Origin: Octopus sinensis
Lineage: Eukaryota
Assembly (NCBI RefSeq): GCF_006345805.1
Contig: NC_042999.1
Span: forward strand, 12,648,001 to 12,712,000
DNA: 64,000 nucleotides
Direction: 5' to 3'
In this document: positions 4,044-64,000 of the stretch, one piece after another
Layout: each line of letters opens with the position of its first letter
Numbering within the stretch: position 1 is the first letter of the stretch
Position numbers and translations under genes: made by a program
Notes under the pieces: generated by a model
Told to the model about the DNA's origin: nothing
The model's input: the letters and a program-made list of their open reading frames with translations, nothing else
Database searches by the model: none

Positions 4044-4193
4044 TTAACTCTTATAAACATACTAAACATTATTTTTAAAAGTAAAATCTATTGGCAACAA
4101 TCTTTTAAACTGCAGAAAGCTATTATTTAGATTGTAACTGGTCGATATTGGTGGAGTGCATTTCTTTTTATTTATAATTTTTGTTGTTTACAG

Positions 4194-4444
4194 GTTCTGA
4201 GTGTGTCTGCTTGCAGAAAATTTCACAGACATTCAAATAATCCATATGAAGAACAAGAAGTTGTTGGATTCTATCCAGGATTAAGCTGTGAGGATGCCAG
4301 ATACCCACTTAATAATTCAAATCCAGTCATTGTCAAAGAAAAATTTTGTCATCTCCTTGGACATAGTCAAATTGAAGTTGGCAAAGAAATAACAATAGGT
4401 TGTAAAAACTGCATTTGTATGCCTGGTGGAAAATTGAAGTGCAA
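4194..4444 (+). CDS. Exon 1 (in window): Cys-module C-half (FYPGLSCED) and half-VWC ([11 protein letters not shown])
   Basis: Acceptor ttgttgtttacag, donor AA|GTAAGT (phase 2). ORF 4203-4448. Confidence 0.85.
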
Positions 4445-7400
4445 GTAAGTGGCCAGGTACAGTTTATAATTAAATGATGTTTGAAAACAAGAATAAACAT
4501 AAATTTTACAGTCATTAGCTAGCAGAAAATAAATAGCACTTATTTTTTTTTTATAAAATATTACTTACATCATCATCATTTAATGTCCATCTTTCATAGT
4601 GGTATGGGTTGAATGGTTTGAGAGGAGTGAGGCAAGCTGAAGAGCTGCACCCATTGTCTGCTTTGGTATGGTTTCTATGGCTGGATACCCTTTCTCATGC
4701 TACCCACCAGTGCCAACCATCAGTGCTTTTTACATGGCACCAATGTAAGTGGAATCACCAAGTAACTTGCAGGATAATGACCTCTCAATTGGAAGAGGGA
4801 GTGGAACCAAGGGAGGTGGCTTTGTGTCAGCTGAGAGGTTAAAGTATAAGGGAGGGATAGAGATGAGTTAGTATAGGGTTACTTGGTTACCTGAGTGGGA
4901 TAAGAAAGGAGAGGAAGAAGATAAAGTGAGAGAGAGATGGTGGAACAGTGGTGGGGAGCATAAGTGGTACAGACGGGATAGAAGGGGATGTTCCATAAGA
5001 GTATGAGGGTAGGGGAAGAGGGAGCTGTAGCGAGTGGCTGGGGTGGGTGGGTGTGTAGTAGATATGTGAGGGCATAGAGAGTGTGCACGTAAGGTATATG
5101 AGGGTTAATGGAGGGGACTGTAGTGGGTGGTGGGATGGAGGTTGGGTAAACGGATTGTGAGGGAGGTGGGGCATGGCCGTAAAGGATATGCCTGTATGTA
5201 TGCATGGCCATGGTTTTACTTGGCTTGACATACAAATTTGATATTTCCTGCAGGTAATAAAAATAGTATAATTCCTTATTTTTCACAATATAATAATTAC
5301 AATTACTTGTCATTTGTAATAGATATTCTATATTAGAAGAATATTCCTCTCAAAATATTGGATTCGAATTTTGGCACAAGGCCAGCGAGTTTGGAGGAAG
5401 GGGCTGAGTTGATTAAATCAACCCCAGTGTTCAGCTGATTCTTATTTCATTGACCCTGAAAAGATGACAGGCAAAGTCAACCCCAACAGAATTTGAACTC
5501 AGAACATGAAGATGGACAAAAGGCTGCTAAGCATTCAGTCTGCTGACAATTCTGCCAACTCACTGCCTTATTCATATCAAAATATCAATAATTCTTTCCA
5601 TAATAGGCCCAGGGCTTGAAATTTTGGAGGAGGGGGAAACTTGATTATATTTTAATGACCCCTGAAAGGATGAAAGGCAAAGTTGACTTTGGCAGGATTT
5701 GAACTCAGAATGTAAAGACAGACAAAATGCCAGCTCTTCACCTTATATCAAAATATTAAGAATAAAAGAACATTTAAGTAGTGAACATTACTAAATATGG
5801 CAATTGGTATTTCGAAGAATACAAATATGTTAACTCTTTTGATATTAACCGACCTGAGACTACTCCTGGTTCTATGATACAAACTTCCTGTTTAAATTGC
5901 TCTAAATTAAAACCATCTTTCAAAATGTCACACTAATTTATACTCCAAACACTAATAATAACAAAATTAGCTTTTTCATTATTTTCAAAATGAAATGAAA
6001 CAAAGCAGTGTATCTGAAGAGAAATATGGTAACAAGACTTTAAAAAAATGTGATAGATGATATATATACTAATTAGAAACTGGAATTAAATATAAAAACT
6101 TTTTAATGAATTTATAATATTGTTCTGGAAAATTTGAAGAAAATTGTCAAAAGAAAATTAAAAAGGAATTAATTTGAATCTCGTTTATTCATTTGTGAAT
6201 ATGTTATTAGTTTGAGTTCAAGACTTGTAGATGTTTCAGGGTCTATAAAATAGTACCAGTCAATTACTTGGTGTAATTGACAGACTCCTCCCCACAAAGC
6301 TGCCGGCCTTGCGCCAAAGCTTGAAACCATTATTACCGTCTGTAAAATTCTTCATCTCATTGGAACTTGCTTATATTTTCCTAGATGTTCTGACTTAATT
6401 CTTCGCAAAGAAATTCGAGATTTCACCTGGGAAGAGATGGCCAAACTGCAGCAGGCTATTTCCCAGCTTCGTTTGTCAGGAATAGACAATATCTGGAATA
6501 AATACAGAGACCTCTACATGGTTCATCACATGCATTCACATGGTGGGGCATTCTATCTTCCATGGCATCGCCAGTTTTTGCAGCTTGTTGAATTGCAACT
6601 GAAAGAGATAGACTGCCATGTTACCTTACCATATTTTGATTTCACAACTGATGCTGCTAACTTCTCAGAAGCCATCATCTGGCAGCCCAATTTCTTTGGA
6701 GGAGATGGATGGGGATGGTGTGTTCCAGATCATGCTTTTGGTGACAGGTGACTATTTAATGTTGTTTTTGCATGTTACTCTTAAAAAGGAATTTTAATTA
6801 ATTAGTATTTCCCACAGTCATCATCATTATTTTCTGTTTGTTTTCCATGCTGGCATCACTTGAATGTGTCACCATGGTCTGTGTCTGTTCTTATTTGAAG
6901 ATTTTGTCCTGCTACATGGGTCAAAAGACCAAGCTTCTCATGTAGCTTGTGTTTGGGGCTTGGTTTCTAGTATTGTATATCTTTCCTGAATGTGCTGTGT
7001 GTGTGTGTTTCTGTGTGTACACAGAGTAATCTTCTTTTAAGCACTATTGCCACAAAACTGCATCCATTTGAATATAAACATCATTTTACTTCTCAAAAAT
7101 CCTATCTTTATTATATTCGAATGGAAAACATTTACTTGAGATCTTAAGATTAACATGATAATGACCACTAATCTTAAAATTAAGCTTGAATGAACCTATT
7201 TTTTGCTTTGTTAAGACTTAAGATTTTAAAAAGTGTGGTCAACATAAAAAAGAATAATTTAAGATTTGATTAAATTGGGATTTAATTAAGGGCAATTAAT
7301 ACTTCTCAGGCTCCTTTATATTATTAATTGTTCTTTTTTTTTTAACAGTAATGCTTGGAAACCATGCCTGAAAAGGAATTTCAGCCATATTGTTGAGGTC

Positions 7401-8040
7401 CCAACAATGCTTGATGTTGCTGCTGCCATCAGTAAAACAGATTTCATGGAAATGAGTGAACTTCTGGAGACATTTGCAGCGTATATCCATTCCTTTGTTG
7501 GTGGTGATATGTCAACGACTGCAATGGCTTACGACCCTCTCTTCTACATCATTCAAACCTACATTGACAGATTGTATGCCACCTGGCAGAAAATGGGCCA
7601 CAACAAATTTAAATTCCCAGCAGCCTATGGAAATATTCCAATGGTTCCATTCAATACGGCACCATTGGATGTTCTTGATCTAGAAAATGACCTCTGTGTG
7701 ACTTACAGTCCTCCAGGAAAGGGTCGACCATGCAACAAAACTGTTCATTTGCATGTGTCAGAGTTAAGTGCTGTTGAGAAAAATCCTAATATTCATGTGA
7801 AAATCATAAGTAGATCTGGTTATGATCAGTTTGGTTACAATTCCAGGGGCTTTGACCGTAGAGGCTTTAATAAATTTGGATATAACTATCATGGTAAGTG
7901 ATTTTATTTCTTTTTGTTACAATGTTTAATCCTGTTAGAACATAGATTTTGATAATAATGTTCTATAAATTGTCTCTCCATCTTTTTTTTGCGAAAGTAT
8001 TTTTGTCATTTAAAAGGGACATCTCGATCAATGTGTGTGT

Positions 8041-8100
<60 letters not shown>

Positions 8101-9581: not shown

Positions 9582-9615
<34 letters not shown>

Positions 9616-10280: not shown

Positions 10281-10316
<36 letters not shown>

Positions 10317-14872: not shown

Positions 14873-14919
<47 letters not shown>

Positions 14920-14970
14920 TACATACATATATATATATACACATGTATATATATATTTATACATATATAC

Positions 14971-15052
<82 letters not shown>

Positions 15053-18000
15053 TTTGTATAATCCCTCCCACCAGTCTGCTCCATTTCACCAAACTTAATA
15101 CAAAGACGAATGAAATACTTAGGTGCACTTCTTAGGAGGATTTGTCTTTTTTTTTTGCCTTTTAGCCTTGATACTTTAAACTGTTCTGGGAAATGCTATT
15201 GATTATTCTAGTGTGTAGTAGCTGTTGTAACATGCATGAGGTAGCATTGAGGGCACCTTGTTTGTGTTCTCTTCTATATCATGTTTGAAGACTTCAGACC
15301 TGGCTGTGAAGAGAGGTTGTGCATGTATAAGTTCTGTATGACAGCCTCATCCAGCACACTTGCTAAAAAAATTGTATTCTTAATTTTGCATTAATCATGA
15401 AGGTTTCCAACTCACTCTGTATGTTGCCAGTTTTAACATGTCTTCTTTTTTCTTTTTATGTTTCTGCAGGTGTTAACCGAGAGGGATTTGATCGAGAGGG
15501 TTATGACTTGGCAGGATATAACCGGTATGGATTTGATCGTGATGGTTATGACCGGGATGGTTTCAATGTTTCGGGCAGAGATCGTGATGACAAGTTGGAC
15601 ACTTCTCTTATTTTTGAGAAACAATACTTACCACATAGGCATTGTTTAAACAGGAAAGGTTAGTATTGACTCTATAAAAAAATTATAGGACAAATTTGAG
15701 TATTTGTTAGAGTTTCAATTTTAGTTTTGTAAAATTTTAATACTTTATTTACTTTCAGGATTTCTGACTTAAATTCCTTGTGACTTTAGTTTAAAGCAAA
15801 TTGAACTCTTTTAAGATTCAGATTATTCTGTCAAATGTAATGCTTATTTATTTCTATTGTTTTAAATTAATCATGCATCATCTCTTGGCTTTGAGATTTC
15901 GATATGATTTTTTTATTTTTACAGTAAGATTGGTAGGTGTGAGAGGCTGGATCTGGATGGTTTGAACATCTAACAGAATATTTGGGTCGGATATGGCTGG
16001 TTTAAATGATAAAAGGTTTAACATTAGTGGTTAAGGAAATATCTAATGTATTGCATACAAGAACAAATGGGGTTAGAAAAATTTCTTATTAGGTGTGGGT
16101 AGGGATCTATTCCTAAGAAGTTCTCTTTGCAGCCAGGTGGCTTCATGTCCAGTCTCACTGCATGACACCTTGATCCAGTGTCTTCTACTCTAGCCTTGGA
16201 CCAAACGGTACCTTGTGAGGGAATTTGGTGTATGGACTAAAAACAAGCCCATCATGTCAATCCCACTTGTTCAAATACACTGGAGATCAATAAATATGTA
16301 AGAACTGGGTTGAAAAATCCTTTTGCATAGAAATTGTTGAAGGCTGTTTATGAGACTTGGATGCATGTCTCCTGGAGACAAATGTTCTCTTGAAAGGTTA
16401 TAAATTCCTACAATTTTTACTGATAAAAATTAAAGTTTCTAAAACAGGAATTTGAAGTATTACTTTGGTCTAATGGAGTTGCACAGCCACAGCCTTTGAC
16501 TTTCTCTATCCAAAATGGTTTTTCAGCCCAATATTTACTGGTTATTATTTATAGACTTATGTGCTTCAAGAGCTGCTGTTCCAAAAGAAATTATTTCATG
16601 TTCTGTCAAAAAAAAAAAAGAAATGATTATTTTTTTATCCATTTCAGGTCTTACTAAAGATGGCTTTGACCGATATGGTTTTGATATCTATGGATATGAC
16701 TTGGAAAACTGCAATTATTCCTTTAAGGGACCATTTACTACACTGTTGATGCATCGTGTTTGGGAAATTCTTCATACCCAATCGCATGAATTTCTTGTAA
16801 CTCTGACTAAAACCTGTCAACCTTTGAAACAACTTCCAAATGTTTGGTATAAGCAATTTTGGATGGAACCCCATGAAGCATTTGTGGTAGGTAAGTATTT
16901 ATTTAATGTTTTCATTTTATTGTTTGGCTTTATTATTTGTTGTTTATATAAATAAATGTGAAGAATTACATGGAAGCACTTACGCAATTATGCTGATGCT
17001 TCGAGTGGCCATGAATTGGGAACAGAAAATGAAACATATCTTATTGTAGTTAAAATTCAATAATTTTGGTAACAAAGCATTGAATAGATAAAAGATAATT
17101 GAATTGGTATAACATCAACAATTATCAGAAAGAAATGACAAATATTCTTAATTCTATCTCCAAAAATTGAAATGACACTGGATAAAAATGAAAAGCATTT
17201 TCCCGAATCAGGAATTCTTGGTCCTGCATAAAGGATGTGCACACTTTCCAAGTAAAAATAAATTCTTTGTAGAAGCTGAAAAAATTGTGTTTTGAAGTTA
17301 GAGATGAAATAGCTAAATAGGATTTCTTTGCAGCAGATGTTTATACTCTTTTACTTGTTTCAGTCATTTGACTGTGGCCATGCTGGAGCACTGCCTTTAG
17401 TCGAGCAAATCGACCCCAGGACTTATTCTTTATATTAACTTTATTGTGTCACTATATGTGTTTCGAAATATTCTGCCTTTATTTCAATTAATTTTGAAAA
17501 TAATGAAGAATTTTGTGAAATAACATTTGTCATAATTAAGTTCAAGAGAAATGTGGTATGAAAAAGGTTAAGAGCATCCAGCTGTAGAAACTGTGCCACA
17601 ACAGACAATTGGAGTTTGGACAGCTCTCCAGCTGGCCAGCTCCTTTCAAACTGTCCAACTCATGCCAGCATGGAAAATGGACATTAAATGAGGATGATGG
17701 TAATAATGACATTGCAGTATCTAAAAAGCTATAGCATATTTTTCAGAGTTTTAATAGAATTATCTGAAAAAAATCTCACAACAGTTATTTAGGATGAGTA
17801 GAGTTCTTTGCAGAAAGGAAGTTGGTTGAACCCCTTTCATACCAATCCACTTGAGGCTGCTCCTTGTTCTATGATAACAGAAACTTCCTCTTTTAAAGTG
17901 ATCTACATTTAAACCTTCCATCAGAATTTCATATTAAGTTTCAAATACATGTTTATCTAACTAAATTCCTTCTTTTTTCAAGATTCATTGGAACAAAAGC

Positions 18001-21000: not shown

Positions 21001-24000
21001 CCTGATGTACACAATTAAAACATCAAATTATTACAGCTATCTGTGTACCACATTTAATGTATATATACTGTTGAAAGCATGATGCTGTAGTGAGAGAAAA
21101 TCTCTTTACAGACATGATAAAAACACAATATATATTGCTACTAAGCGGAAATTGTCTTAGCAGTGACATAAAACACCAGACAGATTCTAACCTTCTTAGG
21201 CCTCGTCAAGGGTGTGTTCTCACTCCCACATGCCTATATAAAATTATCTCCCTCTGACATATAGGGAACAGTGAATGATTTATTCACTAATATTGTAGAG
21301 AGCTTGCTGAACTGTAAATAAACTCAGTGCATGTATTTGAAACAGCAAATAATCATCTACATAGATATGTACGGCTATTACAGTTGAGAAAGCTTTCCAC
21401 AATATATATAAAGATGAACTATGATACACAGATTATTATAATAATGTTTGTCTGTACTTGTAGGGTTAATAGTGTTTATTTGAACCTCCTGTCATAGTGA
21501 CACACCCTCAGCCTATGTTTTTGCTTCTGTTGTATCTATACTCAGCTCCAATAACAATTTCTTAACTTGGAGTGTTTATATTTTTCTTTCATATTCTTAA
21601 CAGATTATTGTCATCCAAATCCATGTCAACATGGTGCTACATGCATCCAATCGGTGTGGCCTGCAGAACCTTGGTTAGTTTCCTGTAAATGTCCACCCGG
21701 TTATGAAGGTGATCATTGCCAGTACAAATCAAAAGAAATTTGTTACCTTCCTTTACAGAAAGGTAAGTCATTTTGTCATGCTCGATTTTCTATGTCGTTA
21801 TTACAGGGTATGACAAAAAATAAAACCCTTCCAGATTCACTAGTCTTGATAAAAGTTACAACAGAAAATGCAAAGTATGGCACCAGTCCTAACTAATAAT
21901 AACAAAAAGCAAGAAATGGTAAAACATTAGCTTGATGAAGACACCATTATTATCTGTCTAACTTAATGAGTGCCATACCAATAACTGTAAAATATGGGCG
22001 GTTTTTCTGTTTCAGCCTGTATTTTGGATAGATTTTAAAATGCAAACACTGTCAAATATTTTAATTACTTATTTACAACTTTTTGTTCATTTATAGAAAT
22101 GTGCTTAAAGAGTTTATTTTACAACTGATGTGGTTAAGGTTATTTGTAAAAGTTGCAAGTCAATGAATGCAGGAAAAATGTGCAGGAAGGGGGTTTCAGA
22201 CTTCCACTGTTCTGGGGAAGAAGGACTGAGCACAAAATATGAGTGATAAGATGAGGAAAGAAGAGTGAGTTGGGTGTTTGTGAGTCGTGGTATTATGATA
22301 TTAGCCAGCTCTGAAGCGTAGAGACCACTGTTAAAGATAGGCAAGGTGAGAAGCAGAGGTTGCTCAATACCAAATTTCATTTAGGTATGTAACTAGCAGT
22401 ACACATCATTGACAAGCCCAAAGGAAGCTGAAATGCATCTGGCATTCTCATGAATCATTGATATATATATATACCTATTGCTTTTTTTAACACAGCATAT
22501 CTATGAAAAGACTTTCTCTCAGAGAAAAACCTTCACATAAAAAGCACTGGTGCTGGTGCCATGTAAAAAGCACCAAAATACAGGCTGCAACAGAAAAACC
22601 TCCCATATTTTACAGTTATTGGTATGGCACTCATTAAGTTAGACAGATAATAATGGTGTCTTCATCAAGCTAATGTTTTACCATTTCTTGCTTTTACCCA
22701 TCCAACCCATGCTAGTGTAGGAATATGAATATATATGACTGTACGTAAGGAGTTTGGTGACATAGGTCTCCTCTCGTACGCCGCGCGGCCACATCCTAAC
22801 ATAATATAATAGAATAAGCCATAATACATGTTTATATTATACAGTGCCAAAGGAAATGAATAAAGGACGCCAAAACCGTTCTACTTTTATAAAGAGAAGA
22901 TAGATTTTATTCACAGTGTACAAAGTGAGTTGTGATTACTAGCGTAGTGTTGTGGTATGAATGCATGCGTATAATATTTGTGTCTGTGTGTTTGTGCGTG
23001 CGACAGGAGGTACAGATAAAGGTGCATGCGAATACACCAGAAATACAGAGCATAAAAGAAGTCTCAACATATTGAGTTAAGATAGAGTTATTTTATCAGT
23101 TCATGTAGTACACGATAATAAGTTCTATAACAAGATTTGGGTCTCGAAGAGGAGATTAGTTGAGTCTCTTGTTGAGCAGGTTTCTCTTGATATAGATGTT
23201 CTTTCAAGTATATATTCTGCAACTGTTTTTCCATGGTCATAGTTTCACACAAACAGCGTGAGATGAATCTGTGTATTTATCTTGTGTACAAGTTGAATCT
23301 CCGGAGATGGAGATGACGTTGGTGATGACGTTCTGTCTGTTGCTGCTATACAGTATAGTTGGCTTGGCTGACGTCTGTCTTTTGAACTGGAACATGGTTG
23401 AGTAAGCTCTGTGAGGTCTCCAACCAGACCTTAGAAGGTCTTGAGTCGAAAGACGGTGAATCGTGGAAATACTAGCCTATTTATGGAGTGAAGATGGCTC
23501 AATTGAAAGATCCTATCTGAAAGCCGTGATTGGTCAGTTTACACACTGGTGCGAAATAAGTAGAGAAACAGACTGCGCTTAGATGCTAACCAATCAGATC
23601 AGTGGACACAACAAGGTTAAACTAGCCAAAGATGTTTGTAATCTCAAACGAGAGCATTCCTAATGTTTTTCTCAAACAGTGAAGATAGCAATATTGCTAC
23701 ACTAGCATGGAAAACGGATGTTAAACGATAATGATGAGGATGATGATGGTGCCACATAAAAAGCACAGGTGATAGTGTCATGTAAAAAGTACCAAGTACA
23801 ATCTTATTTCTTTATTGCCCACAAGGAGCTAAACATAATCTGTAAAATAGTTGGCATTAGGAAGGGCTGTAGAAACTATGCCAAATCGGATCATGAAACC
23901 TGGTGCAACTCCTGACTTTGCCAGCTCCTGTCCAGCTATCCAGCCCATACTGGCATGGACTGGACATTATATGTTGATGATGATCATGATTAGGATGCCT

Positions 24001-25747
24001 TTCAGTGATGTATATAAGTTAAGAATGGTATACAGTTGGCTATAATAATCGTATTTGCCTGAGCTTGCAGGATGTGGTGTTCTTTCACACCTACTCTTCT
24101 GACCTTTCCTTTGAATGCAGTTTTGTTTTTTGTTTGTGCATATGGCAGCAACAATGGCTCAGAGTTGTTGGGAATTATTTTCCAACTGTGAAGTGGAGGA
24201 ATGCCAGTCTTTGGCTGCATCAGTTTTTGTTATGTTGAGGATATACCTTCACCAAGATAGTGAATCCAATCAGTTGTAGTGACATTCAGGGTTCTAGCTG
24301 CATGCTGCTCATGTTTTAAGACTGGAATGGGCTGCAGTAATGTTTTCTTGATTTTAATGTTTTGATTTCTTTTGTGCTTTTGAAGAAGACAAAATTGATA
24401 AAATCTCATTGAAGAATGTTTGCGAGGTTTCTATTCATGGAATCATTATAGGTTTGGTGTGGAGAGGTGACTAGGCTGCATGGGGATAATTTTTGGTTGT
24501 TGGAGACTTAGAGCAGAATGAAGGGTGATATAATTTATGTATAAGTGCTTGAAGGTGACGGTGAGTGGGTCTCTGATGAATGTGGGGTTCAAAACTGAAC
24601 CCTGGGGTACACAAGACATTATGGAATGTGAGTCATAGAGAACTCCATCAATACATATTGTGATAAGGATTTTAAATATTTCCTTTTGCTATCTATAATT
24701 TTTTTATACATTATTTATCAATTTATAAAGACATAGATGTAAAAACCCAACATCATTCTATCTTTTACAGGTTCCTGTTCAAGGAATGTGAGTCGTTGGT
24801 ACTTTGACTTCCATCGATCAAAATGTGTCCAGTTTGATTATTCTGGTTGTGGGGGCAATGCTAATTTATTTGAGACACTTACAGATTGCCAGAAAAAATG
24901 TGTTGTTGGTGCTTGTTGTTACCGGCAGCAACTTAATCCAGCAGTTACCATTGGCTTTGGTCCTGATGGCTATGATAAGTAAGATTAATTTTTCTAATTG
25001 TTTGTTGTATTATCCTTTTAAGCCTTAAGATTTACTTTCGCTCTATCACTAAGGGTTATTCAGCCTCTCTTGTATTAGTGTTATGGGAAAATGCTTCCAG
25101 TACATGTTGTGAAACCATTGATGTTAGAGAGGGCATCAAGTTGCAGAAAGCAAATCAGATAACACACTTGAGCACTTAGTCTTTGGGAATGATAGCGTTT
25201 AATGGGATATCACTCGGATTATGGTGATTCATCCAACCCATGCTAGCATGGAAAAACAAATGTAAAGTGATGTTGATGACAGCAATAGTTTCATTTGTGT
25301 GAATATCTCTTATTATAAAAGGCAGATTTTATCTGCCTCCCTTTGGGAGTTATACAAATCTACAATATAGGATTTCTTCAATTACAATTTACCTAGCAAT
25401 TTTAAGAGTACAATGCATCGCGTCATGCCAGGTCCAGTTTTTAAAATTTCAACTCCAATTAAGCAAAATTTACAGAAAACTCACATTCTGGTGTGTGTGT
25501 CAAATGCTTTTCTTAGTCTGGTTTACACCACACGCAAACGCACACACACAGTGGGCAACAAATAAAGTGAAACTAGATGTAATATTTGTTTCTCTCTATC
25601 ACGCTGATAGATACATGAGTAAAATGTATGGGAAGCTAACACATAAGTGTGAGTGAAAATGTTCTTGGAAGAGAGTAAATAGCCAGAGATAGTGATTTGA
25701 GGAACACTCATACATACATACATACATACATACATACATACATACAT

Positions 25748-32100: not shown

Positions 32101-35100
32101 GGTATTCTTGGGTAAGTAGATGAAGGATCAAACTTGTGGATAAGATGCAACTTTATCACTAATAACATTTCCAGAATAAATATAATTCCTGATAATTGTT
32201 CTTCATAGCTAAGGAAAGTGAGGTAATGAAGAATTAAGAAGCCTGGGGACACATACTTGCATGTACATAGACACAATGTACAGATTAGTGTAAAGTAAGT
32301 TAAACTATTCTTTTTTTTTTGTTTCCTAGTCCAGTTAATTCATAATTTTAAGTTGACAAGAATCACCAGGTTTTCAGTTTCTTTGCATTTTTCCATTGGT
32401 TGTCATTTATTCATCATCATCATCATTTAGCGTCCGCTTTCCATGCTAGCATGGGTTGGACGGGTCAACTGGGGTCTGTGAAGCTGGAAGGCTTCGTCAG
32501 GCCCAGTCAGATCTGGCAGTGTTTCTACGGCTGGATGCCCTTCCTAACGCCAACCACTCCGCGAGTGTAGTGGGTGTTTTTTACGTGCCACCTGCACAGG
32601 TGCCAGACAGAGCTGGCGAATGGCCACGAACGGATGGTGCTTTTACGTGTCACCGGCACGGGGCCAGGCGATGCTGGCAACGGACACGAACGGATGGTGC
32701 TTTTACGTGCCACCGACACGGGGCCTCAAAACAAATTATTTGTAATCTTTTGGGGTTTTAACTCAAGATAAAATTGCATTTTAATAAAAAGAAATGATGA
32801 GGCAAATGATTACATAAAAATCACAGAATATCATTCTTATTTTGCCTAATTTCTCACCTGCATCACTGATTTGTATAACAATTTTGAGGTAATAATATCT
32901 AATTGATGAAAAATAGGTAAGGTGATGCCAATAAATGAAAATATAGAGAAAGATGATGTATTACCATATGTTAGTTATTTAGTGATCCTATAATATTTTG
33001 AGAAAGATTCCCCTTTCAAAAAATATAAAAAAAAGAAAAAGAATAGAGTTCAGACAAAATGTATTGTTACCTGCCGGCTATTTTGGTGGCCTGTTGGTAA
33101 CCTTATAAATGCCAATTATTTAATTTTGAGTCTCGTTACTGGCAGGCCATTAGAATGCCTTGCTATTCAAAATTATATTAATTGGCAGGAAAAGCTAAGT
33201 TAACTTTAACAGAACTAAGATACCATTACTCTAAATCCATTCTAAACCAGTGTATATGTGATGGAATGTTGTGATGTAAAATAAAATTGATTCAAACAGA
33301 TTAAGGAAATTTATTTCTGTTTCTTTTTACAGGGCAGGGTTCAATTGTGAAGGTGTTAACCGAGATGGTTTGGATATTTATGGACGTCATGCTGGCTTCA
33401 AGTATACTTGCATGAGAACCACAAGGAAAAGGTGTCAACATTTGGAAACCGAAGATGATGTTCAAATTGTTCGTTTTTCTCCAGGAAAAAAATGTGAAGA
33501 TGTCAGTTGCAAGCCAAATTGTATGTGTTGGTTTAATAATCAGTTCCATAGGATTTGGGACGATTTCAATGTAGGCTGTGAGAAATTTCAGTGTCACTTG
33601 GGAGGGTTTTCAGAAATGAATTCTTGTCAAAAACATTTACAACGCAAAGAGATTCGTGACATGAGTTTTGATGAAATAAAGCGTTACCAACTTGTCATCC
33701 AGAATCTACAGCATGAAAAAAGAAATGGTAAATCTGTGTGGTTTGAATTTGCTGAAATGTATTCAGAATATATTCCTCAAGCTTCAGGAAATCCTTTATT
33801 TTTGCCATGGCATCGCTACTTTTTGTTTATGGTTGAAAAGTTGATGCAAGATGTTGAATGTGGTGTTGTGATCCCATATTATGATTGGACCCTTGATATT
33901 GGTGTCTTGAATAAATCGGTTATTTGGTCATCAAAATTTTTTGGTGGTAATGGTGAAAATGGAACAGACTGTGTCAGATATCATCCGTTTAAGTCTTATC
34001 ATCCACCATATTGGGCACCTTGTCTCCGTAGACACTTCAATTCTTCAGTACATCTTCCAGACGCAATTCATGTTTACTTGGCTTTACAGGAAAGTACCTT
34101 TAGTGATTTCTCAGCTTACATGGAATCAATGCTGCATCTTTTCCAGATGTGGGTTGGAGGCCACATGGACTCACCTCTCAGTGCTTACGACCCCCTTTTC
34201 TATTCACATGTAGCTTTTATTGATAAACTCTGGGATGATTGGCAGAGGAGTCATAAAAAAGGTTTGCTGCGATTTCCTCCTAATTTTCGATATGTTCCTA
34301 TGGAACCTTTCAAAGTTACTCCTGATGATGTATTAGATTGCAAAAAACAAATCTGTATAACCTATCTGAATTTACCATTTGGATCACCATGTAACCAGAC
34401 CAAAATAAAGACCTATGGATATGATAGTGATAGTTATGATCGTCATGGCTTTGATAAAAATGGTTATGATAAAGATGGATTTGATGTACATGGAATAAAC
34501 ATTGATGGCTATATTGATCTCAGAGGAATATATAATAATGAGGGATTTGACAAAGAAGGCTTTTCTCGACAAGGTTTTGATAGTATGGGCTACGACAGAG
34601 ATCTTTTTTTCAAAGATGGTTACAATTCTGACGGCTTTGATGTTGCTGGCTATGACAGATCTGGTCATAACAGATATGGTTTCAGTAGAATCAAAACGAA
34701 TGTCTTCAGTGAACATGTCTCTACATTCAGAAAGAATGAGTTCAATGAACTTGGATTAAATAACTTGGGTTTTAATAACAAAGGGTTTGACATTTTTGGT
34801 TTTGACAAGGATGGATTCAATCGCTTTGGCTGCAATTACTATTTCAATGGCCCGTTTTATATAATCATATACCAGTCACTTAAAAATAAACTTAGCGAGA
34901 TAAAATCCATGCATTCTTTGATAAATATTCCAAGGTTGTGTTCTGCAGTGTCACAGCTTCCTCAGTGGATGTATAAAGTTTATTGGTTGAACCGGCAAAA
35001 AAACATTCCAGAAGTTTTGGCAATAATGGCTCTGGACAGACTGAAAAATCCTTATTCATTTGATGATGTCTTTGACAAAATTTGGGTTCCTCCTGTTCCT

Positions 35101-38100
35101 GATCCGAGGTAAACAATAACAATTTTGATTTATTGATTTTCTAAAAAAAATTCATTTATTCTATTCTGACCAATTCCCGGCTGTGTGTGTGTGTGTGTGT
35201 GCGTGTGGTGTGTGTGTGTGTGCGTGTGTGTGTGTGCGTGTGTGTGTGTGTGTGTGTGCACATGTTTGTGTTTTGCACACATTTTACAGCTTTTACGACT
35301 AGGGGACAGAGGGTTAAAAATGTGTGCACACAAGGTCTTCAAGTCAAATTTCTTTAATTGAAGAGGATTATTCAATTCACAATGCAATTCAAAAGTAAAT
35401 TTTTGTGCTGAAAATTTGAACCTTGGTTGAGACTGATAATTGTGTTAATTTGTATTTGTTTAACAATTTTTATTTCTCTGATTTTAATTGTGGCACCAGC
35501 ACCATTATCAATTCTGCTACGGTGGACAGGTCTTCTTGAGTACAGCTAGGTGCCAGGTATCTTGGTCCTTTGTCAACTCCTTCGTAAGGCTCAGTGTCTT
35601 GAGATTGGCCTTCAATACTTCGTCCCATGTCTTTCTGGGTTTCTTTCTTCCACAAGTTCTCTCCAACTTTAAGTGATCGGCACTTCTGTATGCAACTGTC
35701 TACATCCATATGCATCACCTGACCAAACCACACTAATTCCTCCTATGCCATAATTTTCTCTCACCACACTAGTACTCTGTCACCGATGGGCTAGGGGCTT
35801 TCCCTGTCCCTTAATTGCTTTACTGCTGTCAACACAAATAGCTGGTCCCTCTGTTGGGTTCACACTGAGGAAACTGCCGTTCTCCCATTCACTCTCCACA
35901 TGTAATAATCCCTCATAGTAGCACTTCCATGCCTCTTTCTTTTCAGAGTCACTGAACACAAGCATACCATCATCCATATGTACACACTTCTCTTCCACAA
36001 CATCTTGATTAGACATATTGATGGCTTGTATAAAGGCATTTAAAGTTAGTGGATAAGAGAAGTGATATCACTAAGGGTGATGAATGCATCAATGGCTTCA
36101 AATTTTGGCACAAGGCCAACAATTTTAGTGGTCAGGAGCAAGTCAAATCCAGTACTTGATTCCCTGAAAAGATGGGCTAGGGGCTTTCCCTGTCCCTTAA
36201 TTGCCTTACTGCTGTCAACACAAATAGCTGGTCCCTCTGTTGGGTTCACACTGAGGAAACTGCTTTTCTGCCATTCACTCTCCACATGTAATAATCTCTC
36301 ATAGTAGCACTTCATCCATGATGGAATTTGAACTTAGAATGTAAAGATCTCGAAGAATTGCTGTCCATTACATTAACAATTTTGCCAACTTGTCACTTTA
36401 ATAATAATAATAATAATACAACAACAACAACAACAACAACAATAATAATAATAATAATGATGATAATGATGATGCCTCAAACTATATCTTAAGGAACCCA
36501 CGTTACTGATTAGCCTGTTTCTTCTCTCTGCTTCTTCTATTTCTACTTCAATAGCTTTTGGTCCTATAAACTAGCACACTTCATAGCCTCAAACTCACTA
36601 GGTTCCCTATTTACATCTTGTCCTCATTCCTATAATACCACATTAGTTTATATATAAAACACCAAATGTTTTGTATGATCCTTTCTTCCTTTCAGCTCTA
36701 TGAAATTCTCTTTCCACCTGTTTTTCTTGGACTTTTGACCAACTGAATTTATAGATTAAACATTTGCCTATATCAGTCTTGAAGTGCTCTTCTATGTGTG
36801 CCTAATTCATGAAAAGAAGGTTGGTGTAGTTTTCAGATATGTGAATAGGGTTCTATAGTGAAACATACTTTATTTTTGTTTTATAAAGAATTAGCCATAT
36901 AAATTCTGAAGAAGAATCTTTGTGGTTTAATTTTGTCTGTGTTTTCTTGAGAATTTCCTAGAAGATAATGGACTTAATGAGTCATGCTCATTTAACATCC
37001 ATTTTTCCATGCTTGCATGGGTTGGATGGTTAGTTAGGAACCAAAGGACCATGCTGCCCTCCAACATCTGCTTTATCATGGTTTCCACAACTGGTTGCCT
37101 TACCTAATGTCAATCACTTCATAGTGCACTGGTGCCTCTTTTGTGATACCAGCTCTGGCAAGGTCACAAAGTACTTGCAAGACAAGATCCTTCAACTGAG
37201 TGGGATGTAGTATTGAGTGATATGAGTATGAAAGGAATTTCTTATCTATGGGTCAAAAGAAGGGATATCCATCAGTCCCTTGCAGTGTGTTGTCTGTCTT
37301 GGTAGTTTTTAAATTGTGAGGAATCAATTACAACATGCTTTTGCAATTCCTGTTGATGGAAGCAGTGCAAACCTGGTGGTAGGTGTTTGCTTTCTACAAA
37401 CAGTTGCTAATGTGTAACTCAGTCTAATATTGATAGTTACCTGTATGGTTTAGAGATGACATGGAGGAGGTTGATGTAGAGAAGAAAGAGAACAAGACAT
37501 ATAATGAAACTTGTTTGATTGATGACTTGCAACGCTTACGATATCAACCTGCCTGAGAAGGCCCGCTCCTCATTCTATGATACAAATGTCCTCTTTTAAA
37601 GTAATCTAAATAAATAAAAAAAAAGCCCTTCCACTGAAATTTCTGAAATGTTAATTTATGTTCCAAACACCAGTTAAATAATCTTTTCTGCTCTAGGCAC
37701 AAGGCCCAAAATTTTGTGGGAGGGGCCAGTCGATTAGATTAACCCCAGTATTCAACTGATACTAAATTTATAAACCCAGAAAAGATGAAAGGCAAAGTTG
37801 ACCTTGGCGGAATTTGAACTCAGAATGTAAAGACAGAGGAAATGCCGCTAAGCATTTCGCCCGGCATGCTAATGTTTCTGTCAGCTCGCTGCCTTACACC
37901 AGTTAAATAATGGCAAAGTTATTTTAATAAATTCTTCATTATTTTCAAAATTAATTAAAACAAAGTCAGTGAGTGTATTTTATGTGAAAAATGGTTATAA
38001 AAGGACTAAATACATAATCTCCACTAATCTGTTCTTTTGGAAACAATAAACAAAGCCATGACAGGATCAACTGATTAGCATTAAAGAAAAAAAACTGCAA

Positions 38101-58800: not shown

Positions 58801-60778
58801 CAAGTCTGTCTCAGGTAGGTTTCTATCAAAAGGGTTAAAACACATGAATTATATTAAATAGATAAATATACTACACTGGATTTGTTCTTTTGTTTTATTA
58901 ATGTTTGTTTTCCCATGCTAGTATGGGTAAGACAAGGAGTTATTTGAGGCAGGAATTTTTGCAGCTGAATGCTTTTCCTGTCACCAACCCTTCACCAACC
59001 CTTAACTATTTTTCAAGTAAAGGATTTTTCATTTTATTTCAAAGGTCTTCCAAAGCGTGGAGCAAACCAGTCCTACTCTCAACAAAGAATGACATTATTT
59101 ACATAGGGAAGCATGCACGCACACATCCATCCTCCCCCCTATCTCTCCTTCTCTCTCAAGCTTCCTTTAGTTTCTTTCTATTAAATTCACTTATGTGGCA
59201 TTGGTCTGCCCAGTGCTATAGTAGAAGATACTTGCTGAAGGTGCTGCACAGTGAACTGTTTGCAAAGCAAACTTTTTGATCACGCAGCCATGCTTTGTGT
59301 CTCTATGTGATAAAAAACAACAAAAATTCCGTCAGATTTTCAAACATTAGCAGCTATTTTTGTACTTAAATGAAAAGACATTTAGAAGTATTTGGACCAT
59401 TTTTTCTTCTTTCATATTGTAGGAGATGGTCTAAAATTAGAGAATTATTTCATTTTTCTTGCTTTTAACTGTAAATCTCTGATTATATTCATCAACCCAT
59501 TTATTTTCCTCTTTTTAACTATATTTCTTCAGTCAGATTTTATTGACTGTCAGCCTGTGCTCTGCCCTGAGGTTTCATGTCTCTTCCCTGCCACAGCTAC
59601 AGGGGAATGCTGTCCAAGTTGTAAAGGTAAGCCATTCTAAAAGAACAACCGTTTCCTCTTCCAGGTAAGTCAAACAGGTGTGCTTCGTGCTTTATGTCTT
59701 TATGTAATGTCTTTAACAAGATTTAAACTCATGATTATGCTTCCATATATTTGTTGAAAGAATAAGTGTTAACCTCTTTGTTACCATATTACTGCTCAAG
59801 TGCATTAATTTTGGAAATAAGGAAGAATTTAGTAAAATAATTTTGTCTTTCATAAACTGGTGTTTGTAACATGAAATTTTGAGGGAATGTTTTAATTTAA
59901 ATCATTTTAAAACAAGAAAGTTTTTTTTTTGTATCCTTGAAGCAGGGGCAGTCTAAAGTGGTGGTCGGGTATCAGAAGAGTCAAACTCCATAAATGTGAA
60001 GTTCTATATTTAAGAGATGAGGAATTATTTACATTATTTACATTTGAAAGATATTTGTCCTTATCTTATTTGTTGTTAACACAGCGTTTCGGCTGATATA
60101 CCCTCCAGCCTTCATCAGGTGTCTTGGGGAAATTTCAAACCTGGGTTCTCATTCCTAAGTTTATTTTATGATGTTATTATTATTATTATTCAGGTCACAG
60201 CCTGGAATCGAACTCGGAATCTTGGAGTTAGTAGCCAGCGCTCTTAACCACTATGCCATATGAGGACATATCTGTCAAATGTGAATAATGTAAATAATGT
60301 CCATAAATGTGGTTAGTTCTTTTTGTCTCATCGTTCTGTTAATGGAGTATAAGTTTAATTAACTGCATCGTTATTGTATATTGACAGGTTTTTTTTTTAA
60401 ATCTATATTTCAGTTGGCTGTAATTATGATGAGAATTTCCATGCCTTGAATAGTTCCTTCACTCCTTCCACGGACCCCTGTCAAACATGTTCTTGTCAGA
60501 AAGGCAATGTGTTCTGTGAGGAAAAAGTGTGTACTTCTCTTGATTCTTGTCACACACCTGTTGTTCTGGCTAACGAATGCTGTCCTACTTGTATGGACTG
60601 TGGTCAACATCCCAATGGCTCTCAATGGATGGAAGGCCACTGCCAACATTGTGTTTGTTTGGTAAGTTTTCTTGTTATTTTTCTAATTATCTTTCACTCA
60701 TTTTGATATGGCTTTCCGTTAAAAAGGAAACATATTTTCTTACATATTTTCCTTTTTGAGAATGTGATGTCTACATAT

Positions 60779-60815
<37 letters not shown>

Positions 60816-63800
60816 GACACACACACACACACAGACATTGATACTAATTCATATCTAATTACAAATCACATTATCATTATTATTGTTCATGTGTCCACTT
60901 TTCCATGTGGGTAGGGGTCATTTGGAGTTTGTTGAGGCAGATATTCTAAAAGCTGGATGCTCTTCGTTTATTGAAACGGTCACCTGTTTCCAAGTAAGGT
61001 AATATTTCTCCATGGTCAGACATGTTTTTCTCAGAAGACTGGAAGTGAACAACTTCACCTGTATGATGGCGATGGTAATTTACAATCATTGTGTAATATG
61101 AAGATAAGGGTACACACACACACACACACACAGAGGCTTCTTCCAGTTTCTTTCTGTGAAACTGACTCACAGGGCTTTGGTCGAACCAGGGCCATTATAG
61201 AAGTTACTTTCCATATTGTGAGTGAAATTGATCTGCCTGGGCAGCACACTCAGCTGTTCTTGCTCCTTGGCTGATGAAATACCTCAGAGGCTTCAGAAGG
61301 CAACTGATTCCTTCAGGGCTCTTTTGAGTCTTATATCCAGTCCCAACATGGCATCACAAAGCAGACAAAAGTTGTTGTGCACATTCTGTGTGTGTGTGTG
61401 TGTGTGTGCGTATTCTGGCATCACTCCTTTACTCATATGAGACATGGAGCCTTTACTGGCATCATGTAGGAGACCTTGAATGCTTCCATCAGAGATGTCT
61501 CAGACATGTTCTGAATGTTGGCTGACTCCAGGAACAGAACTCTTGAAAAGAACAGATGTCCTGAGCATTGAAACAACGGTGCACAAGCACCATTTACATT
61601 GGATTGGACATCTTGTTTGGACGAATGATCAGAGGATGCCTAAACAAACTCTGTATGGTGAACTTGTTTGCGGAGAGCCCAGAGCAGAAATCAAGACTAT
61701 GATTTAAGGATTGTGTAAGATCCTCGTTGAAAGCATGGGGAATATGGGAAGCCAGTTGGGGAAGCAATGCTTGTTACCACCACCAATGGAAAAAGAGAAA
61801 CCAAGTAAAGGAAGGAGGAGGAGGAGTTGGTGTTTTTGAAAGAAACATGCACTTTCCATGCAGAATTTAAGTAAGCTGCTCAAGAACGCACAACCTGTGC
61901 AGTGGATGTTTATCAAGGGCTGAGCTTATTAGTCACCGGCAAAGGCCACAAGTGTAAAGTATAAATTTGTCTGAGTTTACAATATTCTTAATGGTCAGTG
62001 ATGACCTTCAGTCACAAGTGAGCAGCTATAATTTGTGTGTGTATGCATGCATGTGTGTATATATGGATACGTATATATGTGTGTGTGTTTGTGTTTGTGT
62101 CATATAAGTTGTATATGATGAAGACAAGTGTCTCTGTCATATAAGCTGTGTCGTACATTTCCAGTTTCTCTTAAAAATATGTTTGGCTATTTGCTTCCAA
62201 GATATATCTCGCAGATTCCCTGGGATGCATCATCGGTGGTGTTTCTGGGATCTTACAGGGTTCCAGGTCTTTCAACATCAGCCTCCCTTGCACAGTTGAC
62301 TCACCTGAGATGCATCAATTTCCAGCTTGCATCCCAGCAGCAAACCACTGGGCTCTCCTTTTTATCTAAAGGCAACTATTAGCCTTCTGTGCAGCTTCAG
62401 TGATGGAATTTTTGACCCTAGCAAACAGGAAGTGCACCCAACTGTAGAAAATCTGCCTTAGGGAATTCTGTTTCACCCAACCAAGTACAGGAAAATGGAT
62501 GTTAATTTGATGATGGGCCCTTACTGCTAAACTACTTCTCTGCATCTATGTCTGAAATCTTGCATTTCTGTGAACCTGCCTGTGATCCCACTGTGTCTCT
62601 TGGATTTTTATACATTATTACATTTGATACAAAGTATGAAATCCTTTGTCTACCATTTTGCCATTTTAAGTATGGCCTCTTCTCAGATGGTAACAATGTT
62701 TTGAAGAGTTCTTTATTCTTTCTTGCTTAGAATTTGTGAACTTAATTTTTAAGACATTTTCTCTTAAAATTGAATGATTTTCAGCTCACTTATAAATTAT
62801 CCTCTGTAATCTTCTACTTTAATGTTTTATATTTGCACACACACACACACACACATTGAGTATTTTAACTTCTGATATTGCAGAATGGCACTGCCAAATG
62901 TGAGCAAAAGGTGTGTCCATCAATTGAGTGTAAATACCCGGTACTTCCTGATGGAGAATGTTGTCCTCGTTGTCATGGTAACATATTTCAGGCAACTGAT
63001 TATTTTATTCTTTTTATGTGAATAATTTATTAATGTTTCAAGAAAATGTATTCTTTATATATTTTTCATGTTTTAGTTTTAAAAAACTGATTTTTCTGAC
63101 AAAAGCATTTAAAAACACAACTGTAGTGTACCGGTCTGCTTTGTTTCCCTATGTTCCTGCAGCCATCTGACTGCATCCAACCCTTGCTTATAGCCATCTT
63201 TCACTCTATGCTGTCTTCTATTCACTTCTTTGGTCATACCCGCTTGAGATTATGTTCTGGCACCCCTCCAGCCACCCATCTAAAATGTAAAGCAACCACG
63301 AATCTCCTCCACAACAAACCTCTTCCTAATCCTCCCATCATACATTACCTTCCCAACACCTTATATAAAGCCCCCGCACCATCTCCTGTTCCCACTCTTG
63401 AGCTAAGAAGCCTGTTGGTCTTGTGAGTTACAAGGCAACCTCACTAGTACTGGTGCCATGGAAAAGTTTCTGGTACACTCTGTTAAGTGTTGGCATTTGG
63501 AAAAACATCTAGCCATAGAAACCATGTCAAAACTGAGACATTGGTGCAAGATGTCATCCTCCAAGCCATTGGATTCTGTCTAACCATCCAACCCATTCCA
63601 GCGTAGAAAGCAAATGTAAAAATGTCATTTACTATCAATTAACGTCATGTGATCTATATATTTGTGCTGATATGTGTGTGTGTGTGTGTGTGTGTTACCA
63701 GGATGTTAAAAGCATAAAAAAATATCTCTGTAAATCTGAAAACAATTCTGTTTTTCTTGTAGACTGCCTGGTTGATGAGAAAATAGTATTGAACGATGAT

Positions 63801-63942: not shown

Positions 63943-64000
63943 GTAAAATCCCATTCAGTTGAGTAATTAAGCTTTCTCTCATTATCGTGTCTGCTGCATT

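What the first reader, a model, noticed from the sequence alone, without database searches (positions are those of the whole stretch)
6385..7710. Tyrosinase-like domain 1 keeps about 3 of 6 copper ligands but gains a local His cluster
Seen: the CuA region reads [26 protein letters not shown]2 and A3 (H-x8-H) are present, the usual A1 position aligns to Tyr, and three extra His lie nearby. The CuB region reads [13 protein letters not shown]...[10 protein letters not shown], so B1 is Ala, B2 is His and B3 is Gln. Established: type-3 centres need six His. Inference: no binuclear oxidase activity, but a mononuclear metal site built from HHMHSH is possible.
Basis: partly seen in the sequence, partly recalled or inferred. 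Interest (0 to 1): 0.75.

Follow-up and report, generated by a model that had tools for sequence, protein, structure and literature searches.

The report
Copper-site-degenerate tyrosinase domain in octopus KCP-like gene
This is a real, well-conserved tyrosinase-fold domain that has lost half of its copper-binding histidines; it sits in a giant secreted kielin/chordin-like protein of an octopus, and relatives show that most of that loss dates to early bilaterian animals, so it is an old "dead enzyme" module rather than a working oxidase.

Summary
Two exons (6385-6747 and 7349-7893, + strand) encode a 303-aa domain that matches Pfam Tyrosinase (E=5e-22). It reads [31 protein letters not shown] and [10 protein letters not shown].

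I aligned it to 116 relatives that keep the six ligands. The ligand columns are domain residues 44/52/61/164/168/190. The CuB helices carry a single His, so a type-3 dicopper site cannot form.

The whole window is the N-terminal half of one gene, the orthologue of Argonauta hians "kielin/chordin-like protein" (3774 aa). That protein has EGF, Kunitz, two tyrosinase-like domains, G[FY]D repeats, about 20 VWC domains and a VWD domain.

Orthologues occur in molluscs, a brachiopod, a hemichordate, an echinoderm and amphioxus. In all of them A1 is Tyr and B1 is never His. The closest domains with six His are in choanoflagellate Kunitz-tyrosinase proteins.

Of the extra histidines, H47 is invariant and H50 is common. 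H48 is not conserved, and position 52 (A2) varies.

Best reading: a non-oxidase structural or binding module. A rebuilt single-metal site (H47, H50 or H52, H61) is not excluded.

The parts
6385..6747 (+). Exon a of tyrosinase-like domain 1 (residues 1-120 plus two bases of codon 121). It holds the CuA region: Y44 (A1 position), H47, H48, M49, H50, H52 (A2) and H61 (A3).
   Evidence: Sequence and splice signals. tblastn to Argonauta KCP-like P0020 aa 525-645, 86.8% identity. Pfam PF00264.
7349..7893 (+). Exon b of tyrosinase-like domain 1 (residues 121-303). It holds the CuB region: A164 (B1 position), H168 (B2) and Q190 (B3 position). It also holds conserved Cys237 and Cys249 and the start of the G[FY]D/N repeats (about 7800-7893).
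   Evidence: tblastn to P0020 aa 643-824, 78% identity. Ligand-column table.
4194..4444 (+). Upstream exon encoding a Cys-rich module that directly precedes domain 1 (…[14 protein letters not shown]…[16 protein letters not shown]). It has no Pfam match in the window. The equivalent stretch of Batillaria P0018 has a weak, below-threshold match to an FnI_RECK-like model.
15457..15660 (+). Exon with G[FY]D/N repeats that follow domain 1 ([33 protein letters not shown]…).
   Evidence: P0020 aa 820-887, 78% identity.
16635..16889 (+). Exon with the last repeats and a conserved module without a Pfam family ([14 protein letters not shown]…). The same module follows domain 2.
21594..21764 (+). EGF-like exon of the second unit.
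   Evidence: Pfam EGF, E=7.7e-9..
24770..24979 (+). Kunitz/BPTI exon of the second unit.
   Evidence: Pfam PF00014, E=8.8e-16..
33325..35109 (+). Single large exon holding a Cys-rich module, tyrosinase-like domain 2, G[FY]D/N repeats and the C-terminal module. In domain 2 only A3 of the six ligand positions is His.
   Evidence: Pfam PF00264, E=3.2e-24. Ligand table. tblastn to P0020 aa 1262-1856, 84.7% identity.
60413..63944 (+). First VWC (chordin-type Cys-rich) exons of the same gene: 60413-60661, 62884-62976 and 63762-63944.
   Evidence: Pfam VWC, E=1.2e-10 and 7.4e-9. Colinear with P0020 aa 1977-2151.

Best explanation
Domain 1 is a tyrosinase-fold module that cannot act as an oxidase. It is part of the N-terminal region of a giant secreted kielin/chordin-like (KCP-like) protein of an octopod.

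Shown:
- It keeps the tyrosinase sequence signature, and a moderate-confidence model gives the four-helix bundle.
- It keeps the generic structural residues: LPWHR, E69, PY..D, GG, DP.F and D194.
- Cysteines at 77, 112, 127, 237 and 249 are conserved in the orthologue-type domains; whether they form disulfides was not tested.
- Three of the six copper ligands are replaced (A1 to Tyr44, B1 to Ala164, B3 to Gln190).
- The CuB helices carry only one His.
- The A1 and B1 replacements are shared by the orthologous domain in molluscs, a brachiopod, a hemichordate, an echinoderm and amphioxus.
- The sister domain 2 is even more degenerate.
- The closest domains that keep six His are in choanoflagellate Kunitz-tyrosinase proteins.

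Inferred:
- The dicopper site decayed before or early in bilaterian evolution.
- Since then the domain has been kept under purifying selection for a non-catalytic role. It may be a rigid structural or protein-binding module acting together with the adjacent Kunitz domain, Cys-rich module and Tyr/Phe-rich G[FY]D repeats.
- The former copper cavity is refilled by family-specific residues (Y44, H47, M49, Y166, Y182).
- No dioxygen binding or phenol oxidation is expected.
For: - Pfam Tyrosinase hit.
- AlphaFold2 model with helices 36-46, 57-75, 153-171 and 184-202. Its best PDB fold matches are Bacillus and Streptomyces tyrosinases (probability 1.0, TM about 0.5).
- Ligand-column table: Y/H/H/A/H/Q here, against His in 75-96% of 116 relatives that keep their ligands.
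- All 23 non-redundant domain-1-type sequences have Y44 and none has His at 164.
- Argonauta has the same A164 and Q190.
- The gene is colinear with Argonauta KCP-like protein aa 445-2151 over window 4191-63944, at 61-92% identity. ORFs and splice sites are intact.
- Orthologue architectures are 2 Tyrosinase + 20-30 VWC + VWD.
- Named taxa span at least seven phyla.
- A neighbour-joining tree places domain-1 and domain-2 types as sister clades, each holding protostomes and deuterostomes, with six-His choanoflagellate domains outside them.
- Amphioxus domain 1 has lost A3, B2 and B3 as well, yet still scores 407 bits against the family profile.
Against: - The non-catalytic role is inferred from sequence only. 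No metal content, activity or expression data were available.
- The model is of moderate quality (mean pLDDT 61.6), and its coordinates could not be read, so the side-chain geometry of the old site is unknown.
- H47, M49, H50, H61, H168 and (in most species) H190 are conserved around the former site. That is more than a simple cavity filler needs and would fit a residual metal site.
- The tree is a simple neighbour-joining tree without support values.
Confidence: 0.78

Rival explanations
1. Domain 1 has been rebuilt into a single-metal (Cu or Zn) site at the old CuA locus. The ligands would be H47 (one turn after the lost A1), H50 and/or H52, and H61, possibly with Y44 or M49. The domain would then be a metal-binding or metal-sensing module, or a different kind of redox module.
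For: - H47 is invariant, M49 is present in 91% and H61 in 96% of 23 domain-1-type sequences.
- 20 of 23 have H47 plus His at 50 or 52 plus H61.
- H50 aligns with the Cys at A2-2 of mollusc hemocyanins. In those proteins that Cys is bonded to the A2 His (PMC11803259), so the position lies next to the CuA site.
- Four His in six residues is rare by composition alone (0.8% of shuffles).
Against: - H48 is not conserved, and position 52 varies.
- Lingula has H47-A-I-Q and amphioxus has H47-I-S-E. Amphioxus also lacks H61, yet both keep the domain.
- About 20% of relatives that keep their ligands also have His at 47, so it need not be a new ligand.
- No coordinates, so no geometry.
Confidence: 0.17
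2. The domain is still a working phenol oxidase or oxygen binder that uses non-canonical ligands (Tyr44, Gln190) for a dicopper site.
For: - The fold and many second-shell residues are kept.
- Gln and Tyr can ligate copper in other proteins (general knowledge).
Against: - B1 is Ala, which has no ligating side chain.
- The CuB helices hold a single His.
- Position 164 is A, V, I, L or S across the family, and the seventh His next to B3 is Ile here.
- To my knowledge, no type-3 protein works with one-His CuB.
Confidence: 0.03
3. It is a decaying relic (a pseudogene or pseudo-exon), or a separate tandem tyrosinase gene, rather than part of a functional large gene.
For: - Half of the ligands are lost.
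- The exons are separated by long, repeat-rich introns.
Against: - Reading frames are open and splice sites are canonical.
- Core identity is 85.5% to Argonauta and about 51% to the deuterostome domains.
- The window is colinear with one 3774-aa protein model.
- Another genome shows the same order: Kunitz, Cys-rich module, domain 1, repeats, module, Kunitz, repeats (L001).
Confidence: 0.02

Closest known systems
Short-spacing secreted tyrosinases and catechol oxidases (alpha-subclass type-3 copper proteins with CuA motif H-x7-H-x8-H; PPO types a-f of PMC11803259, e.g. mollusc tyrosinases and fungal short PPOs)
   Same: - Same Pfam family (PF00264).
- The same ungapped spacing between the A1, A2 and A3 columns.
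- The same LPWHR, GGDM and DP.F....D motifs, and the same predicted four-helix bundle.
   Different: - A1, B1 and B3 are Tyr, Ala and Gln.
- The His next to B3 is Ile.
- PYWDWT has become PYFDFT.
- The domain is an internal module of a protein of more than 3000 aa rather than a free-standing enzyme.
Kielin / kielin-chordin-like protein (KCP) and crossveinless-2-type BMP modulators
   Same: - The gene continues into VWC repeats inside the window.
- Its Argonauta orthologue has 20 VWC domains plus VWD and TIL.
- Databases name the orthologues kielin/chordin-like protein.
   Different: - From my own recollection, not tested here, mammalian KCP and Xenopus Kielin have no tyrosinase, Kunitz or G[FY]D-repeat region.
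- Here, and in shark, teleosts, Limulus, Lingula and others, one or two tyrosinase-like domains precede the VWC array.
- BMP binding of this protein has not been tested.
Choanoflagellate Kunitz-tyrosinase multidomain proteins (e.g. Salpingoeca rosetta PTSG_11343 and PTSG_12389, and a S. urceolata protein)
   Same: - They are the closest tyrosinase domains outside the KCP-like set.
- The local order is the same: Kunitz, then a G[FY]D-like stretch, then the tyrosinase domain.
   Different: - Several of them (P0038, P0039, P0040, P0041, P0048) keep all six His plus the seventh His.
- They have no VWC or VWD array.
Type-3 relatives that no longer work with copper: copper-free arthropod hexamerins and pseudo-hemocyanins, and zinc-binding TYRP1/TYRP2
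   Same: These show the same evolutionary theme: a dicopper fold kept after the loss of oxidase or oxygen-carrier chemistry. This rests on general knowledge and PMC5855855.
   Different: - Hexamerins belong to the arthropod (beta) branch, which has other Pfam families.
- TYRP1/2 keep all six His and bind zinc.
- This domain is alpha-branch, keeps 3 of 6 His, and is fused to a chordin-type protein.
Mollusc hemocyanin functional units
   Same: They give the top summed sequence scores in the PDB. Aligned to them, H52, H61, A164, H168 and Q190 fall on their A2, A3, B1, B2 and B3.
   Different: - Per-unit scores are low (16-39 bits, against 72 bits for Streptomyces tyrosinase).
- The hemocyanin A1 lies in an insertion that is absent here.
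- There is no Cys-x-His; H50 stands at the Cys position.
- Pfam reported only PF00264, with no hemocyanin C-terminal domain.

Membership tests
Tyrosinase / type-3 copper central domain (PF00264) | Significant match to the family profile | tested here: met
   E=5.1e-22, 79.7 bits against a cut-off of 22.6, covering residues 40-202.
Tyrosinase / type-3 copper central domain (PF00264) | Four-helix-bundle fold similar to solved tyrosinases | tested here: met
   AlphaFold2 model with helices 36-46, 57-75, 153-171 and 184-202. Foldseek top hits are Bacillus megaterium and Streptomyces tyrosinases (probability 1.0, TM about 0.5). Model quality is moderate (pLDDT 61.6).
Tyrosinase / type-3 copper central domain (PF00264) | CuA site: three His in H-x(n)-H-x8-H | tested here: not met
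   The A1 column is Tyr44. H52 (A2) and H61 (A3) are present.
Tyrosinase / type-3 copper central domain (PF00264) | CuB site: three His in H-x3-H-x(n)-H | tested here: not met
   B1 is Ala164, B2 is His168 and B3 is Gln190. There is no other His on the two CuB helices.
Tyrosinase / type-3 copper central domain (PF00264) | Binds two copper ions and dioxygen, or oxidises phenols | not testable with these tools
   This needs metal analysis and enzyme assays on the recombinant domain.
Kielin/chordin-like (KCP-like) proteins | Array of VWC (chordin-type Cys-rich) repeats in the same polypeptide | tested here: met
   Window exons 60413-60661 and 63762-63944 match VWC. They are colinear with the VWC region of Argonauta P0020, which has 20 VWC domains.
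Kielin/chordin-like (KCP-like) proteins | C-terminal VWD domain | tested here: inconclusive
   It is present in the orthologues (P0020, P0022, P0027, P0028). The corresponding part of this gene lies beyond the window.
Kielin/chordin-like (KCP-like) proteins | Binds BMPs and modulates BMP signalling | not testable with these tools
   No functional data. The name is an automatic annotation.
Mollusc hemocyanin functional unit | Long A1-A2 spacing, Cys-x-His at A2, and a C-terminal beta-sandwich domain | tested here: not met
   The spacing is short (A1 column to A2 is 8 residues). His50 stands where the Cys would be. Pfam reported only PF00264.

The most novel reading that the evidence does not exclude
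The paired tyrosinase-like domains of KCP-like proteins may be an ancient, bilaterian-wide repurposing of an active Kunitz-tyrosinase cassette that is still intact in choanoflagellates. On this reading, domain 1 kept a rebuilt three-His (H47, H50 or H52, H61) single-metal pocket, or a phenol- or tyrosine-binding pocket. That pocket would dock the neighbouring Tyr/Phe-rich G[FY]D repeats or a partner protein, coupling metal or matrix state to the VWC array, which is presumed (not tested) to bind BMPs.
Probability: 0.15. Interest if true: 0.75.

Novelty: new variant of a known kind. Interest (0 to 1): 0.5.

Why it matters
Type-3 copper proteins are usually treated as enzymes or oxygen carriers. 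The copper-less derivatives I know of are arthropod hexamerins.

Here an alpha-branch tyrosinase domain lacking half of its ligands, two of them replaced across phyla, has been kept for more than half a billion years inside a chordin-type extracellular protein. The protein occurs from molluscs to sharks and teleosts. Versions with the full six histidines survive in choanoflagellates.

The papers I could search mention these proteins only as ">3000 aa outliers with a kielin/chordin-like domain" (PMC11667028).

This gives a clean, testable case of how a metalloenzyme becomes a non-catalytic matrix or signalling module. It also flags an unstudied N-terminal region of KCP-like proteins.

For genome annotation it is a warning. 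"Tyrosinase domain" hits in such genes should not be counted as phenol oxidases, for example in shell-matrix or pigmentation gene counts.

Tried and rejected
1. I first thought YRDLYMVH matched the Streptomyces YDEFVRTH motif, which would make H47 the true A1. I rejected this. Ungapped alignment to 116 short-spacing relatives puts A1 at Tyr44, and PMC11803259 confirms a 7-9-residue A1-A2 spacing for this branch.

2. I considered two tandem paralogous genes, each with its own tyrosinase-like domain. I rejected this because the window is colinear with one Argonauta protein, and orthologue models hold both domains.

3. I considered a hemocyanin functional unit, because hemocyanins top the PDB list. 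I rejected this. The high scores are sums over many units, each unit scores low, and the hemocyanin features are absent.

4. I tried to judge His geometry from a model. The AlphaFold2 job returned only confidence values and secondary structure, and no coordinates reached the script environment. Geometry could not be measured.

5. The first protein search returned only ORF-like fragments without names. The gene's identity came only from the profile search plus the name look-ups.

6. Literature searches for a described tyrosinase-VWC/KCP fusion, or for inactive tyrosinase-like domains, found nothing specific.

7. The bacterial and viral collections were not searched, because they are irrelevant to an animal gene.
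Full report
**What is in the sequence.** The window is animal DNA with introns, (TG)n microsatellites and about 35% G+C. On the + strand, two exons with canonical splice signals encode the flagged peptides.
- Exon a is 6385-6747.
- Exon b is 7349-7893.
- They are joined through a split Ser codon.

It matches Pfam Tyrosinase (PF00264) with E=5e-22. Against solved structures it matches mollusc hemocyanin units and bacterial tyrosinases.

**Which residues sit in the ligand columns.** A profile of the domain and its homologues was searched against 1.84 billion representative proteins. I aligned the 174 full-length domain hits to that profile.

In the 116 relatives that keep their ligands, His dominates exactly six columns. 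These correspond to domain residues 44, 52, 61, 164, 168 and 190, with His in 86, 97, 112, 100, 108 and 107 of the 116. The CuA stretch aligns without gaps: HLSxVPxAHGNPxFLPWHR against [19 protein letters not shown]. This is the short H-x7-H-x8-H spacing that PMC11803259 describes for mollusc, cnidarian and fungal short polyphenol oxidases.

The window domain reads as follows:

| Ligand | Residue |
|---|---|
| A1 | Tyr44 |
| A2 | His52 |
| A3 | His61 |
| B1 | Ala164 |
| B2 | His168 |
| B3 | Gln190 |

The "seventh" His next to B3 is Ile189. Hemocyanin alignments give the same B1, B2, B3, A2 and A3 equivalences.

My own first guess was that H47 is A1, by analogy with the Streptomyces motif.

**Can it be a dicopper site?** The domain's histidines lie at 47, 48, 50, 52, 61, 78, 116, 134, 168 and 205, plus four in the C-terminal tail. 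An AlphaFold2 model has mean pLDDT 61.6 and pTM 0.61. It shows the expected bundle helices at 36-46, 57-75, 153-171 and 184-202. Its best PDB fold matches are Bacillus megaterium and Streptomyces tyrosinases (probability 1.0, TM about 0.5).

The two CuB helices carry only His168. A three-His CuB, and therefore a type-3 centre, is excluded by sequence alone.

**What gene this is.** The top profile hits are giant proteins. The best is GAB1599713.1, "kielin/chordin-like protein [Argonauta hians]", 3774 aa. Others with the same name come from Lingula, Anneissia, Limulus, the shark Hemiscyllium and teleosts. Unnamed models come from Ptychodera, Branchiostoma, Patella, Owenia, crustaceans and a spider.

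Pfam finds 2 Tyrosinase + 20-30 VWC + VWD in the Argonauta and Lingula proteins. It finds 1 Tyrosinase + 22-29 VWC + VWD in the shark and Limulus proteins.

Residues 445-2151 of the Argonauta protein map colinearly onto window 4191-63944 at 61-92% identity. The order along the window is:
1. Cys-rich exon
2. Domain 1 (two exons)
3. G[FY]D/N repeats
4. An unnamed module
5. EGF (21594-21764)
6. Kunitz (24770-24979)
7. More repeats
8. One large exon (33325-35109) with a Cys-rich module, domain 2, repeats and the unnamed module
9. After a 16-kb intron, the first VWC exons (60413-63944)

The window is therefore the N-terminal half of one octopod KCP-like gene, and "domain 1" and "domain 2" belong to the same protein. 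A contig from another animal (L001) shows the same order in compact form, with domain 1 in a single exon.

**How old the degeneration is.** Identity comparisons and a neighbour-joining tree (no support values) split the KCP-like domains into two clades.
- The domain-1-type clade holds molluscs, Lingula, Anneissia, Branchiostoma and Ptychodera.
- The domain-2-type clade holds cephalopods, Lingula, Ptychodera, Limulus, shark and teleosts.
- The two clades are sisters.
- Choanoflagellate domains lie just outside them. These keep six His and are likewise preceded by a Kunitz domain and a G[FY]D-like stretch.

In the 23 non-redundant domain-1-type sequences:
- Tyr44 is invariant.
- Position 164 is A, V, I, L or S, and never His.
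- H61 is kept in 96% and H168 in 91%.
- Position 190 is His in most sequences. It is Gln in the window, in Argonauta and in the crinoid, and Tyr in amphioxus.
- Position 52 (A2) is H, N, S, R, K or Y.

The losses of A1 and B1 therefore predate the protostome-deuterostome split. The B3-to-Gln change is a later step, seen in both octopods and separately in the crinoid.

Amphioxus domain 1 keeps none of the six ligands, although it does keep H47. It is still a strong family member (407 bits).

Domain 1 is about as conserved between the window and Argonauta as the rest of the protein: 86.8% and 78% for its two exons, and 85.5% over the core. It is about 51% identical to the deuterostome domains. 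This argues for maintained function, not decay.

**The histidine cluster.** Four His in six residues is uncommon by composition (0.8% of shuffles). The four have different histories.

| Residue | Status |
|---|---|
| H52 | The retained A2 |
| H47 | Invariant in the domain-1 clade; about 20% of ligand-keeping relatives also have His there |
| H50 | Present in molluscs, Ptychodera and the crinoid; Q in Lingula, E in amphioxus. It aligns with the Cys at A2-2 of hemocyanins. In those proteins that Cys is bonded to the A2 His (PMC11803259), so it lies next to CuA |
| H48 | Ser in Argonauta and variable elsewhere |

Other residues specific to the domain-1 clade around the old site are M49 (91%), Y166 and Y182. 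PYFDFT also replaces PYWDWT.

Twenty of 23 sequences have H47, His at 50 or 52, and H61. A rebuilt three-His single-metal pocket at the CuA locus therefore cannot be dismissed. The exceptions (Lingula, amphioxus and one unnamed sequence) show that the domain can persist without it.

**Conclusion and comparison with known families.** The best-supported reading, at about 0.78, is a non-oxidase tyrosinase-fold module. It is kept for a structural or binding role in a secreted KCP-like protein.
- It passes the profile and fold tests for the tyrosinase family.
- It fails both copper-site tests, so it should not be filed as a tyrosinase enzyme.
- It is not a hemocyanin unit.
- It resembles arthropod hexamerins only in the theme of lost copper chemistry.

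The single-metal variant gets about 0.17. Residual oxidase activity gets about 0.03, and a pseudogene or separate gene about 0.02.

The papers I could search mention such proteins only in passing, as very long outliers with a kielin/chordin-like domain (PMC11667028). Aguilera et al. 2013 do not mention them. I therefore rate this as a new variant of a known kind, of moderate interest.

The decisive work is metal analysis, activity assays and a structure of the recombinant domain, with a six-His choanoflagellate domain as control.

Noticed in passing
window 33622-34500 (within exon 33325-35109): Tyrosinase-like domain 2 of the same gene is more degenerate than domain 1. The ligand columns read Y, S, H, L, Q, V, so only A3 is His. 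The non-ligand His next to B3 (position 189) is kept. Pfam Tyrosinase E=3.2e-24. The Argonauta orthologue has the same residues at all ten tabulated positions.
   Followed up: partly
window about 7800-7893, 15457-15585, 29990-30184 and about 34480-34900: Runs of short G[FY][DN]xxG[FY][DN] repeats rich in Tyr and Phe follow each tyrosinase-like domain. They have no Pfam family. Similar stretches lie next to the six-His tyrosinase domains of choanoflagellate proteins. Their role is unknown; a tyrosinase substrate-like or docking element is one possibility.
   Followed up: partly
window 16635-16889 and about 34900-35109: A conserved module of about 70-100 aa (NCNY.F.GPF…LP.W.Y…) closes each unit after the repeats. 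It is conserved in Argonauta, L001 and P0017 and has no Pfam match.
   Followed up: partly
window 39211-42651 and 43462-51000: Two large satellite arrays lie inside the 16-kb intron between exons 33325-35109 and 51192-51293. One has a 34-bp unit in about 99 copies (CA-rich, extreme strand skew). The other has a 64-bp unit in at least 118 copies at 94% match.
   Followed up: partly
window 10194-10472 (+): An intronic ORF contains a …[14 protein letters not shown]… stretch that looks to me like a reverse-transcriptase fragment, probably a decayed retroelement. It is flanked by (TA)/(TG) simple repeats.
   Followed up: no
L001 (ENA ERZ25071447 ctg87260) 3065-21085: An unidentified animal genome holds the orthologous gene in much more compact form. 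Domain 1 there is a single 361-codon ORF without the intron seen in the octopod, and it keeps His at B3.
   Followed up: partly
related proteins P0028, P0033, P0034, P0036 and P0172: Shark and teleost "kielin/chordin-like" proteins carry one domain-2-type tyrosinase-like domain ahead of the VWC array. If these are true KCP orthologues, the N-terminal tyrosinase-like region was lost in the lineage leading to the tetrapod KCP described in the literature. The tetrapod side is from my recollection and was not tested.
   Followed up: no
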